Below, piece after piece: positions 2,865 to 3,460 of a stretch of DNA of 60,263 nt (its first letter is position 1; each line of letters starts with the position of its first letter). Made by a program: the position numbers and the translations under genes. The DNA lies in NCBI RefSeq assembly GCF_006345805.1, contig NW_021833938.1, positions 1 to 60,263 on the forward strand, read 5' to 3'. The notes under the pieces are model-generated. The model worked only from the letters and a program-made list of their open reading frames with translations, was not told the origin of the DNA and made no database searches. Source of the stretch: Octopus sinensis (taxonomy: Eukaryota).

Positions 2865-3460
2865 TTCAGCTGACCAGTCTAGCAACAGCCACACCCAGCT
2901 GACTAATCTTACAAACAACCATACACAGTTGACCAGTCTGACAACAGCTGACACCAGTCCTGCAGCAATCACATCTAGCTGACCATTCCAATAGCTACAC
3001 TCAGCTGACCAATCCCACAATAGACAAAGCTGACCAGTCTAATAGCCACACCCAGCTGACCAGTCTAAAAGCCACACCCAGCTGACCAGTCTAAAAGCCA
3101 CACCCAGCTGACCAGTCCTGCAGCAATCACATCTAGCTGACCATTCCAACAGCTACACTCAGCTGACCAATCCCACAATAGACACAGCTGATCAGTCTAA
3201 TAGCCACACCTTACTGACCAGTCCTGCAGCAATCACATCTAGCTGACCATTCCTACAGCCACACTCAACTGACCAATCCCACAATAGACACAGCTGACCA
3301 GTCTAACAGCCACACCCAGCTGACCAGTCTGAGAACAGCCACACTCAACTGATCACTTAGCTGACCAGTCCATTAGCCACACCCCCACAAGCTGATCATT
3401 TTCATCAATGTCCAGCGGGATCAGTTCCAACATGAACTTAGCTGACCAGCAACTTGGTCA
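2865..3460 (+). repeat. Degenerate ~26-bp tandem array, core (CA)GCTGACCA
   Basis: Units such as gccacacccagctgaccagtctaaaa; about 17 TGACCA counted by eye on + between 2871 and 3448. Period is not a multiple of 3. Confidence 0.9.

What the first reader, a model, noticed from the sequence alone, without database searches (positions are those of the whole stretch)
2865..3460. Array of ~17 TGACCA motifs, the BCL11A binding site, inside the presumed BCL11 intron
Seen: a ~26-bp-period array whose best-conserved part is GCTGACCA; about 17 TGACCA on + and one on - (3455-3460), several as TGACCAAT and most overlapping a CAGCTG E-box, while the spacers have drifted. Established: the C-terminal C2H2 fingers of mammalian BCL11A bind TGACCA, and the CCHC finger (the exon in this window) drives multimerisation, which favours clustered sites. 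Inference: a minisatellite co-opted as an autoregulatory homotypic cluster. The spacing of about 2.5 helical turns would alternate DNA faces. The C-terminal fingers lie outside this window, so conservation of specificity is assumed.
Basis: partly seen in the sequence, partly recalled or inferred. Interest (0 to 1): 0.7.

Follow-up and report, generated by a model that had tools for sequence, protein, structure and literature searches.

The report
Intronic minisatellite carrying BCL11-type motifs
A roughly 700-bp tandem repeat, probably in an intron of a mollusc BCL11 gene, carries that factor's best binding word once per 26-bp unit, but the many copies come from amplification and there is no sign of ongoing selection, so it is most likely an ordinary minisatellite.

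Summary
There are 17 TGACCA on the + strand (2871-3448) and one on the - strand (3455-3460), in a 26-bp-period array that runs from about 2779 to 3465.

The array is a two-layer minisatellite. Four unit subtypes (A, B, C, D) form a 106-bp higher-order repeat (B-C-D-A) present in three copies, 90-95% identical, with decayed edges.

- **Motif multiplicity:** every word of the unit is enriched about 40-fold (CAGCTG ×11, GCTGAC ×16), not just TGACCA.
- **Older layer:** among the subtypes the core AGCTGACCA is better conserved than the spacer (p about 0.001).
- **Recent layer:** the 12 mutations since the amplification hit the core at the neutral rate (5 observed, 5.0 expected).
- **Premises:** these hold. 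The BCL11 CCHC exon lies at 24538-24949 (-). ZF4/ZF5 recognition helices are identical from human to a gastropod. TGACCA is the highest-affinity BCL11A site. The fly orthologue represses itself.
- **Untested:** binding, regulatory function, orthologous conservation and genome-wide dispersal. The source genome is in none of the searchable collections.

Verdict: a real array and a real coincidence (chance about 1-3%), but most likely a neutral minisatellite. Co-option is possible and unproven.

The parts
2779..3465 (+). Full extent of the tandem array: about 25 units of 25-31 bp, unit consensus CAGCTGACCAGTC + a 12-16 nt spacer
   Evidence: The self-alignments cover 2824-3448 only.
2945..3052 (+). 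Higher-order repeat copy 1 (units B-C-D-A, 108 bp). Its B unit has an AC insertion that breaks the motif (TGACACCA).
   Evidence: It is 95.4% identical to copy 2.
3053..3104 (+). Two extra identical A units (CAGCTGACCAGTCTAAAAGCCACACC), a local 26-bp duplication
3105..3210 (+). Higher-order repeat copy 2 (B-C-D-A, 106 bp). Its A unit carries TGATCA.
3211..3316 (+). Higher-order repeat copy 3 (B-C-D-A, 106 bp). The E-box is lost in B (TTACTG) and in D (CAACTG).
2779..2944 (+). Left decayed edge: 6 units. The motif reads TGGTCA (inverted), TAATGT, TAACTA, TGACCA, TGACTA, TGACCA.
3317..3465 (+). Right decayed edge: units with TGACCA, TGATCA, TGACCA, TGATCA, TGACCA, then the single inverted TGACCA at 3455-3460
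24538..24949 (-). BCL11 exon encoding the CCHC finger (ZF0). The acceptor is ttttgcag|TG and the donor CAG|GTCAGT. It lies 21.1 kb 5' of the array in gene sense.

Best explanation
This is a lineage-specific minisatellite, probably intronic, built in two stages and evolving neutrally now. An ancestral unit of about 26-29 bp (CAGCTGACCAGTC plus a spacer of about 13-16 nt) was first duplicated in tandem and diverged into at least four subtypes (A, B, C, D). A 106-bp block B-C-D-A was then amplified as a higher-order unit, about three copies plus two extra A units, presumably by unequal exchange or replication slippage. Units at both edges were left out of this homogenisation and decayed. The 17 TGACCA are therefore about four inherited copies multiplied by amplification, not 17 independently maintained sites. 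Because the unit contains the best BCL11 word and mollusc BCL11 keeps the same DNA-contact residues, the array would probably be bound in vitro. Nothing shows that this matters to the animal. Shown: the anatomy, the two layers, the neutral recent mutation pattern, the gene context and the conserved contact residues in other molluscs. Inferred: the amplification mechanism, the intronic position and the lack of function.
For: TRF periods 26 and 106/132/158. Four subtypes in the fixed order B-C-D-A, repeated three times at 95.4, 92.5 and 89.8% identity. The edges are decayed, and only 5 of 12 edge units keep TGACCA. Of the 12 mutations since the higher-order amplification, 2 fall in TGACCA (2.7 expected) and 5 in the 11 specified core positions (5.0 expected). 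A core/spacer rate ratio of 0.2 or less is rejected at P=0.011. All words of the unit are enriched alike. TGACCA outside the array is at chance level. There is no coding potential, RNA family or tRNA. The array is almost CpG-free, with observed/expected 0.03. The relative's BCL11 locus carries an unrelated 34-bp × 24 minisatellite about 1.9 kb 3' of its CCHC exon and no TGNCCA cluster within ±10 kb, so such arrays are commonplace and lineage-specific in these introns.
Against: Among the four subtypes the core AGCTGACCA is significantly better conserved than the spacer (Fisher p=0.0007; run-length permutation P=0.004), and pure neutral drift of point mutations does not predict this. It could reflect past constraint, an amplification-competent 'core', or spacer change by indels. 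This is the only sequence-complex minisatellite in the window. The chance that its unit holds TGACCA on either strand is about 1%, and about 3% for TGNCCA. For the 6-mer alone the neutrality test has little power (rate ratio 0.2 gives P=0.14).
Confidence: 0.65

Rival explanations
1. The array is a homotypic landing pad for oligomeric BCL11 within its own gene and mediates negative autoregulation. Tetramers carrying ZF2-3 and ZF4-6 arrays would engage several TGACCA at once.
For: TGACCA is the top-affinity ZF4-6 site (KD 29 nM) and the most enriched variant in peaks (PMC12978192). BCL11A peaks hold multiple motifs and ZF0/ZF1 oligomerise (PMC12006351). The ZF4/ZF5 recognition helices are identical in Elysia, Capitella and arthropods. 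[quoted passage not shown] The core is conserved among the subtypes. The array is the densest TGNCCA cluster of the window, 18 per 600 bp against a median of 1. The chance coincidence is about 1-3%.
Against: Recent mutations hit the core at the neutral rate, including two that destroy TGACCA. The edges lose the motif. Real BCL11A peaks hold a mean of 2-3 TGNCCA (a median of 4 by the looser TGNCCN count), only modestly above expectation, and are not 17-copy arrays. The conserved core is 9-12 nt (AGCTGACCAnTC), longer than the BCL11 site needs. No comparable cluster lies within ±10 kb of the exon in the relative. This gene's own C-terminal fingers were not seen. There are no data on binding, accessibility or expression.
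Confidence: 0.12
2. The array is a cis-regulatory cluster read by another factor. One option is class-II/proneural bHLH proteins on the CAGCTG E-boxes. Another is a composite element in which a bHLH activator and the BCL11 repressor compete for the overlapping CAGCTGACCA.
For: There are 11 CAGCTG E-boxes and 16 GCTGAC, against 0.2-0.25 expected. The conserved core spans the E-box plus TGACCA. In the fly, Scute binds the Cph locus (TSS, exon and intron) and activates it, while Cph auto-represses. That CAGCTG is an Ascl/Scute-type E-box is from my own knowledge.
Against: The same neutral recent pattern applies. Three of the 12 recent changes destroy the E-box (TTACTG, CAACTG). Motif assignment by eye is unspecific, because any 26-bp unit offers dozens of words. 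There are no functional data.
Confidence: 0.07
3. The array is a fragment of a transposable element or of a dispersed satellite family, for example subterminal transposase-binding repeats or an internal TE minisatellite. In that case the conserved core reflects past selection within the element, not host regulation.
For: A conserved 9-12 nt core with variable spacers and an inverted copy at each edge (2783-2788 and 3455-3460) resembles the subterminal repeats of some DNA transposons (own knowledge). The array abuts SINE-like dispersed repeats at 2059-2740. Constraint in the old layer with none now fits a dead element.
Against: There is no second copy of the unit in the 60-kb window. No terminal inverted repeats bracket the array. 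No TE protein domain was found in the ten ORFs scanned against Pfam. Nothing related appears in the JGI metagenome scan, where all 28 hits have unrelated spacers, or in the 5.8-billion-protein collection searched with the array's translations. Both negatives are weak because the source genome is not in those collections.
Confidence: 0.15

Closest known systems
Classical minisatellites (VNTRs) with a conserved core within variable units; higher-order repeat organisation as in alpha satellite (own knowledge)
   Same: Head-to-tail units of 25-31 bp over about 0.7 kb. The interior is homogenised and the edges decayed. A short conserved core sits within otherwise variable units. A multi-unit block (106 bp) is amplified as a whole.
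   Different: Copy-number polymorphism, the defining population property of VNTRs, could not be examined. The core is unrelated to the GC-rich Jeffreys core.
BCL11A multi-motif binding regions (HBG -115 TGACCA, beta-globin LCR and HBBP1 peaks), PMC12006351 and PMC12978192
   Same: The same word TGACCA, three times as TGACCAAT as at the gamma-globin promoter. There are several motifs within a few hundred bp. The protein's contact residues are conserved in molluscs.
   Different: Vertebrate peaks hold a mean of 2-3 TGNCCA (a median of 4 by the looser TGNCCN count), irregularly spaced, in unique sequence. Here there are 17 identical motifs at a fixed 26-bp pitch produced by tandem duplication. 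No occupancy data exist.
Auto-repression of Drosophila Chronophage (BCL11 orthologue), PMC13324515
   Same: A protostome BCL11 orthologue binds several sites in its own locus and lowers its own transcription, and a proneural bHLH activates the same gene.
   Different: The fly sites were mapped by NanoDam, and the term search found no motif mention in the paper. Nothing links them to a tandem array. The present case has sequence only.
Functional VNTR and microsatellite regulatory elements (INS VNTR, SLC6A4 intron-2 VNTR, GGAA repeats bound by EWS-FLI1) (own knowledge)
   Same: A tandem repeat whose unit contains a transcription-factor site can act as a dose-dependent regulatory element.
   Different: In those cases binding and allele-length effects were shown experimentally. 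None is shown here.

Membership tests
Minisatellite / tandem repeat with higher-order structure | Head-to-tail repetition of a 10-100 bp unit, well beyond chance | tested here: met
   TRF period 26, 15 copies, score 284. The paired-core pattern gives 8 matches against 0 in shuffles.
Minisatellite / tandem repeat with higher-order structure | A multi-unit block repeated as a whole, with block copies more alike than neighbouring units | tested here: met
   The B-C-D-A 106-bp copies are 90-95% identical, whereas subtype spacers are 31-69% identical.
Minisatellite / tandem repeat with higher-order structure | Homogenised interior and decayed edges | tested here: met
   Only 5 of 12 edge units keep TGACCA. 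All 14 interior units derive from 4 subtypes.
Minisatellite / tandem repeat with higher-order structure | Copy-number variation between individuals | not testable with these tools
   Only one haplotype is available.
BCL11-bound homotypic autoregulatory element | Multiple TGNCCA motifs within a few hundred bp | tested here: met
   19 TGNCCA in 596 bp against 1.4 expected.
BCL11-bound homotypic autoregulatory element | Lies within the BCL11 transcription unit | tested here: inconclusive
   The CCHC exon lies at 24538-24949 (-). The ZF1, ZF2-3 and ZF4-6 exons are absent from 1-24537. The array is therefore 21.1 kb into the following intron, provided the gene continues beyond the window start. This is an inference.
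BCL11-bound homotypic autoregulatory element | The organism's BCL11 has ZF4-5 base-contact residues for TGNCCA | tested here: inconclusive
   The recognition helices are identical in Elysia (P0021), Capitella, a leech, a tick and a spider. This gene's own C-terminal exons are outside the window.
BCL11-bound homotypic autoregulatory element | Motif positions spared by mutation relative to spacers | tested here: inconclusive
   The old layer says yes (Fisher p=0.0007). The recent layer says no: 5 of 12 events fall in the core against 5.0 expected, and a rate ratio of 0.2 or less is rejected at P=0.011.
BCL11-bound homotypic autoregulatory element | Occupancy by BCL11 and an effect on BCL11 transcription | not testable with these tools
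   This needs CUT&RUN or ChIP, ATAC-seq, EMSA, and reporter or deletion experiments.
BCL11-bound homotypic autoregulatory element | Presence at the orthologous site in relatives | not testable with these tools
   The closest available loci (L001-L007; exon 80-84% amino-acid, 75% nucleotide identity) align only over the exon. L001 reaches only 10 kb from the exon.
Transposable-element internal repeat / dispersed satellite | Further copies of the unit at other loci | tested here: inconclusive
   None in the 60-kb window. None in the metagenome or protein collections, but the source genome is not in them.
Transposable-element internal repeat / dispersed satellite | Terminal inverted repeats or TE protein genes bracketing the array | tested here: not met
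   No inverted-repeat pair brackets the array as element termini would. The ten ORFs scanned against Pfam show no TE domain.

The most novel reading that the evidence does not exclude
A young, lineage-specific minisatellite in the intron after the CCHC exon of a cephalopod or other mollusc BCL11 gene serves as a high-avidity platform of composite CAGCTG/TGACCA sites. A proneural bHLH activator and oligomeric BCL11 would compete on these sites, giving the same activate-then-self-repress circuit as Scute/Chronophage in flies. Array copy number would then tune BCL11 dosage.
Probability: 0.08. Interest if true: 0.7.

Novelty: new member of a known kind. Interest (0 to 1): 0.3.

Why it matters
If the array were truly bound and used by BCL11, it would be a clear case of a tandem repeat creating a transcription-factor autoregulatory element in one step. 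It would also extend BCL11 self-repression, so far shown in flies, to molluscs, in a gene central to neural development. As things stand, it mainly shows that motif counts inside tandem repeats are not independent evidence. Here the count collapses to about four inherited sites, and the most recent mutations show no protection of the motif.

Tried and rejected
1. Orthologous-intron comparison. The exon search found only relatives 80-84% identical (P0001-P0003). Their loci L001-L007 align to the window only over the exon. L001 reaches 10 kb from the exon and the array is 21 kb away.
2. Finding the source contig from the window's own exon ORF: not on record.
3. Metagenome scan for two cores at array spacing. 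The 28 loci found all have unrelated spacers (23-, 28-, 14-bp and other repeats), so they are coincidental and not homologues.
4. Searching the 5.8-billion-protein collection with concatenated stop-free translations of the array, to catch ORFs called through other copies: no hit at E≤10. This is uninformative because the genome is absent from the collection.
5. Literature search for the unit sequence and for cephalopod satellites: only unrelated primers and papers.
6. TE signatures. No bracketing inverted repeats, no Pfam TE domains, no Rfam family or tRNA.
7. Exon 1 (an MSRRKQ-like N-terminus) and the later zinc-finger exons were looked for in the window and not found.
8. Coding potential of the array was rejected: the ORFs are at most 58 aa and are by-products of the repeat.
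9. A spacing rule for BCL11A motifs that would give meaning to the 26-bp pitch: none was found in the parts of the two structural papers that I read or searched.

Full report
**1. The observation**

- TGACCA occurs 17 times on the + strand between 2871 and 3448 and once on the - strand at 3455-3460.
- The remaining 45 copies in the window match the shuffle expectation for the whole window (44.8 ± 6.7). The array is therefore the only excess.
- Tandem Repeats Finder reports period 26 (15 copies, 2953-3352) and overlapping periods of 106, 132 and 158 bp.
- Three motifs read TGACCAAT, and 11 are preceded by a CAGCTG E-box.
- The description is accurate. What it lacks is the higher-order structure.

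**2. Anatomy**

Cutting the array at each core gives about 25 units of 25-31 bp between 2779 and 3465. The interior consists of four subtypes:

| Subtype | Sequence | Length |
|---|---|---|
| A | CAGCTGACCAGTCTAAnAGCCACACC | 26 |
| B | CAGCTGACCAGTCCTGCAGCAATCACATC | 29 |
| C | TAGCTGACCATTCCAACAGCTACACT | 26 |
| D | CAGCTGACCAATCCCACAATAGACA | 25 |

- The subtypes occur in the fixed order B-C-D-A, which makes the 106-bp block.
- The block is present three times (2945-3052, 3105-3210, 3211-3316), with two extra identical A units at 3053-3104.
- The three blocks are 95.4, 92.5 and 89.8% identical.
- Both edges (2779-2944 and 3317-3465) are decayed. There the motif reads TGGTCA, TAATGT, TAACTA, TGACTA, TGATCA and so on, and only 5 of 12 edge units keep TGACCA.
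- This is the usual picture of a tandem array homogenised in the middle by unequal exchange or slippage and left to decay at the ends.
- The 17 motifs therefore reduce to about four inherited copies multiplied by amplification, plus a few edge copies.

**3. Is the motif preferentially conserved?**

The two layers give different answers.

*Older layer, among subtypes A-D:*
- The 13-nt core has 2 variable columns. The spacer has 13 of 16 (Fisher p=0.0007).
- The invariant run AGCTGACCA (9 nt) has a column-permutation P of 0.004.
- The caveats are that there are only four sequences, that the alignment is anchored on the core, and that part of the spacer difference is indels.

*Recent layer, differences among the copies of each subtype:*
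- There are 12 mutational events.
- Two fall in TGACCA (2.7 expected). These are an AC insertion giving TGACACCA at 2949 and a C>T giving TGATCA at 3189.
- Five fall in the 11 specified core positions (5.0 expected).
- A core/spacer rate ratio of 0.2 or less is rejected at P=0.011, and a ratio of 0.3 at P=0.044.
- For the 6-mer alone the power is low (ratio 0.2, P=0.14).

Whatever kept the core intact while the subtypes diverged, there is no sign that it still acts. The core conserved in the old layer (AGCTGACCAnTC) is also longer than a BCL11 site.

**4. Motif specificity**

- Every word of the unit is enriched about 40-fold: CAGCTG 11 (0.21 expected), GCTGAC 16 (0.25 expected), TGTGGY on the minus strand 9, CACCC 6.
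- The BCL11 reading is one of several possible readings.
- The coincidence is still not trivial. This is the only sequence-complex minisatellite among the 14 arrays in the window with period ≥10; the others are microsatellite derivatives.
- The chance that a 26-bp unit contains TGACCA on either strand at this base composition is about 1%. For TGNCCA it is about 3%.
- That figure is a posteriori and does not count the other links a reader might have drawn.

**5. Gene context**

- A tblastn probe and Pfam place a BCL-11A-like CCHC finger (PF25491, E=5e-15) on the minus strand.
- The exon runs from 24949 (acceptor ttttgcag|TG) to 24538 (donor CAG|GTCAGT). Its tail VDAESNTT is conserved even in bivalves.
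- No exon 1 and no ZF1, ZF2-3 or ZF4-6 exon is present anywhere in the window.
- The array therefore lies 21.1 kb into the intron that follows the CCHC exon, provided the gene continues beyond the window start. This is inferred.
- The motifs lie on the strand antisense to the gene, which is irrelevant for duplex binding.
- The exon's nearest relatives in the public collections are unnamed sequences at 80-84% identity, and a bivalve is at 51%.
- SINE-like repeats in the window resemble the abundant octopus SINE as I remember it. This is a lead from memory and not a test, so 'octopus' is plausible but unverified.

**6. The 'established' premises**

- ZF4-6 and ZF2-3 of BCL11A recognise TGNCCA. 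The base contacts come from Asn756 (ZF4) and from Lys784 and Arg787 (ZF5).
- Peaks contain several motifs: a median of 4 TGNCCN, 1.6× expectation.
- ZF0/ZF1 mediate oligomerisation (PMC12006351).
- TGaCCA is the tightest-bound (KD 29 nM) and most enriched variant, and target-gene peaks hold a mean of 2-3 motifs (PMC12978192).
- I found no inter-motif spacing rule in the parts I read or searched. The remark about 2.5 helical turns is correct arithmetic (26/10.5) with no known meaning.
- The assumption of conserved specificity holds up. A search with the human ZF4-6 segment returned protostome proteins whose ZF4 (…SNLTVH) and ZF5 (…SSKLTRH) recognition helices are identical to human. They include the gastropod Elysia chlorotica, the annelid Capitella, a leech, a tick and a spider.
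- Autoregulation has a protostome precedent. [quoted passage not shown]

**7. Is it dispersed or TE-derived?**

- The unit occurs nowhere else in the window.
- No inverted repeats bracket it, and none of the ten ORFs scanned against Pfam has a TE domain.
- There is no Rfam family or tRNA.
- A scan of JGI metagenome contigs for two cores at array spacing found 28 loci. All have unrelated spacers and periods, so they are independent repeats that share a 12-mer by chance.
- A search of 5.8 billion predicted proteins with the array's stop-free translations found nothing.
- These negatives are weak, because the source genome is evidently not in those collections.
- The array directly abuts SINE-like dispersed repeats on its left. 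A pair of ~230-bp elements lies at 2059-2515, with further copies at 5823, 35202 and 45435.

**8. Relatives**

- The only long related locus is L001, a 65-kb ENA contig of which 20 kb is readable. It aligns with the window only over the exon (75% nucleotide identity).
- Within ±10 kb of its exon there is no TGNCCA cluster: the maximum is 7 per 600 bp, and shuffles reach 8.
- It does hold an unrelated 34-bp × 24 minisatellite about 1.9 kb 3' of the exon.
- Lineage-specific minisatellites thus seem to be ordinary furniture of this intron.

**9. Verdict**

| Explanation | Probability |
|---|---|
| Two-stage, lineage-specific intronic minisatellite, now evolving neutrally; motif multiplicity is a by-product of amplification | about 0.65 |
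| Cluster read by bHLH or another factor, possibly composite with BCL11 | about 0.07 |
| Fragment of a TE or dispersed satellite | about 0.15 |

No evidence available here shows it.
- The TE reading would explain past but not present constraint on the core.
- Nothing here required a referred step.

Noticed in passing
window 56108-56438: A locally duplicated module: 61 bp × 2 at 56200-56322, 97% identical, flanked by a 77%-identical pair of about 94 bp. On the minus strand, which is the BCL11 sense strand, it carries TTGACCAATCAGAATC (a CCAAT box) next to GACGTCATC (CRE-like). CpG observed/expected is 0.83, against 0.03 in the array. It lies about 31 kb 5' of the CCHC exon and could be a promoter or enhancer fragment or a TE end.
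   Followed up: partly
window 22040-22510: A tRNA-like SINE copy followed by three ~40-bp repeats, each containing CACTGGTCAA (TGACCA on the minus strand), about 2 kb 3' of the CCHC exon. This is a second, smaller local TGACCA cluster created by repetition.
   Followed up: no
window 2059-2515, 5823-6051, 35202-35682, 45435-45724: A ~230-bp dispersed repeat, 78-89% identical between copies. It is present as tandem pairs at 2059-2515 and 35202-35682. The first pair lies a few hundred bp to the left of the array.
   Followed up: partly
L001 12366-13179: The relative's BCL11 locus has an unrelated 34-bp × 24 minisatellite (ACAAAAGATATGGGCCACAATGTCTGTAAGACCA) about 1.9 kb 3' of its CCHC exon.
   Followed up: partly
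window 24538-24949 (-): The end of the CCHC exon encodes PLKPxKQV(V/A)DAESNTT, which is invariant from this sequence to bivalves although the region between it and the finger is only about 50% identical. It is a conserved short motif of unknown role outside the finger.
   Followed up: no
window 39-584, 4166-4716, 20470-20999, 14669-15086: The window is extremely rich in long microsatellites and their derivatives: (AC)n about 278 copies, (AGAT)n about 138 copies, and 20- and 30-bp AC/AT-derived arrays. TRF gives 360 rows for 60 kb.
   Followed up: no
L009, L011, L014, L016-L018, L024-L026 (JGI metagenome contigs): A 23-bp tandem repeat (AGCTGACCACTCACCTCCATCTA) recurs on many contigs of several metagenome samples. 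It is unrelated to the window apart from the shared 12-mer.
   Followed up: no
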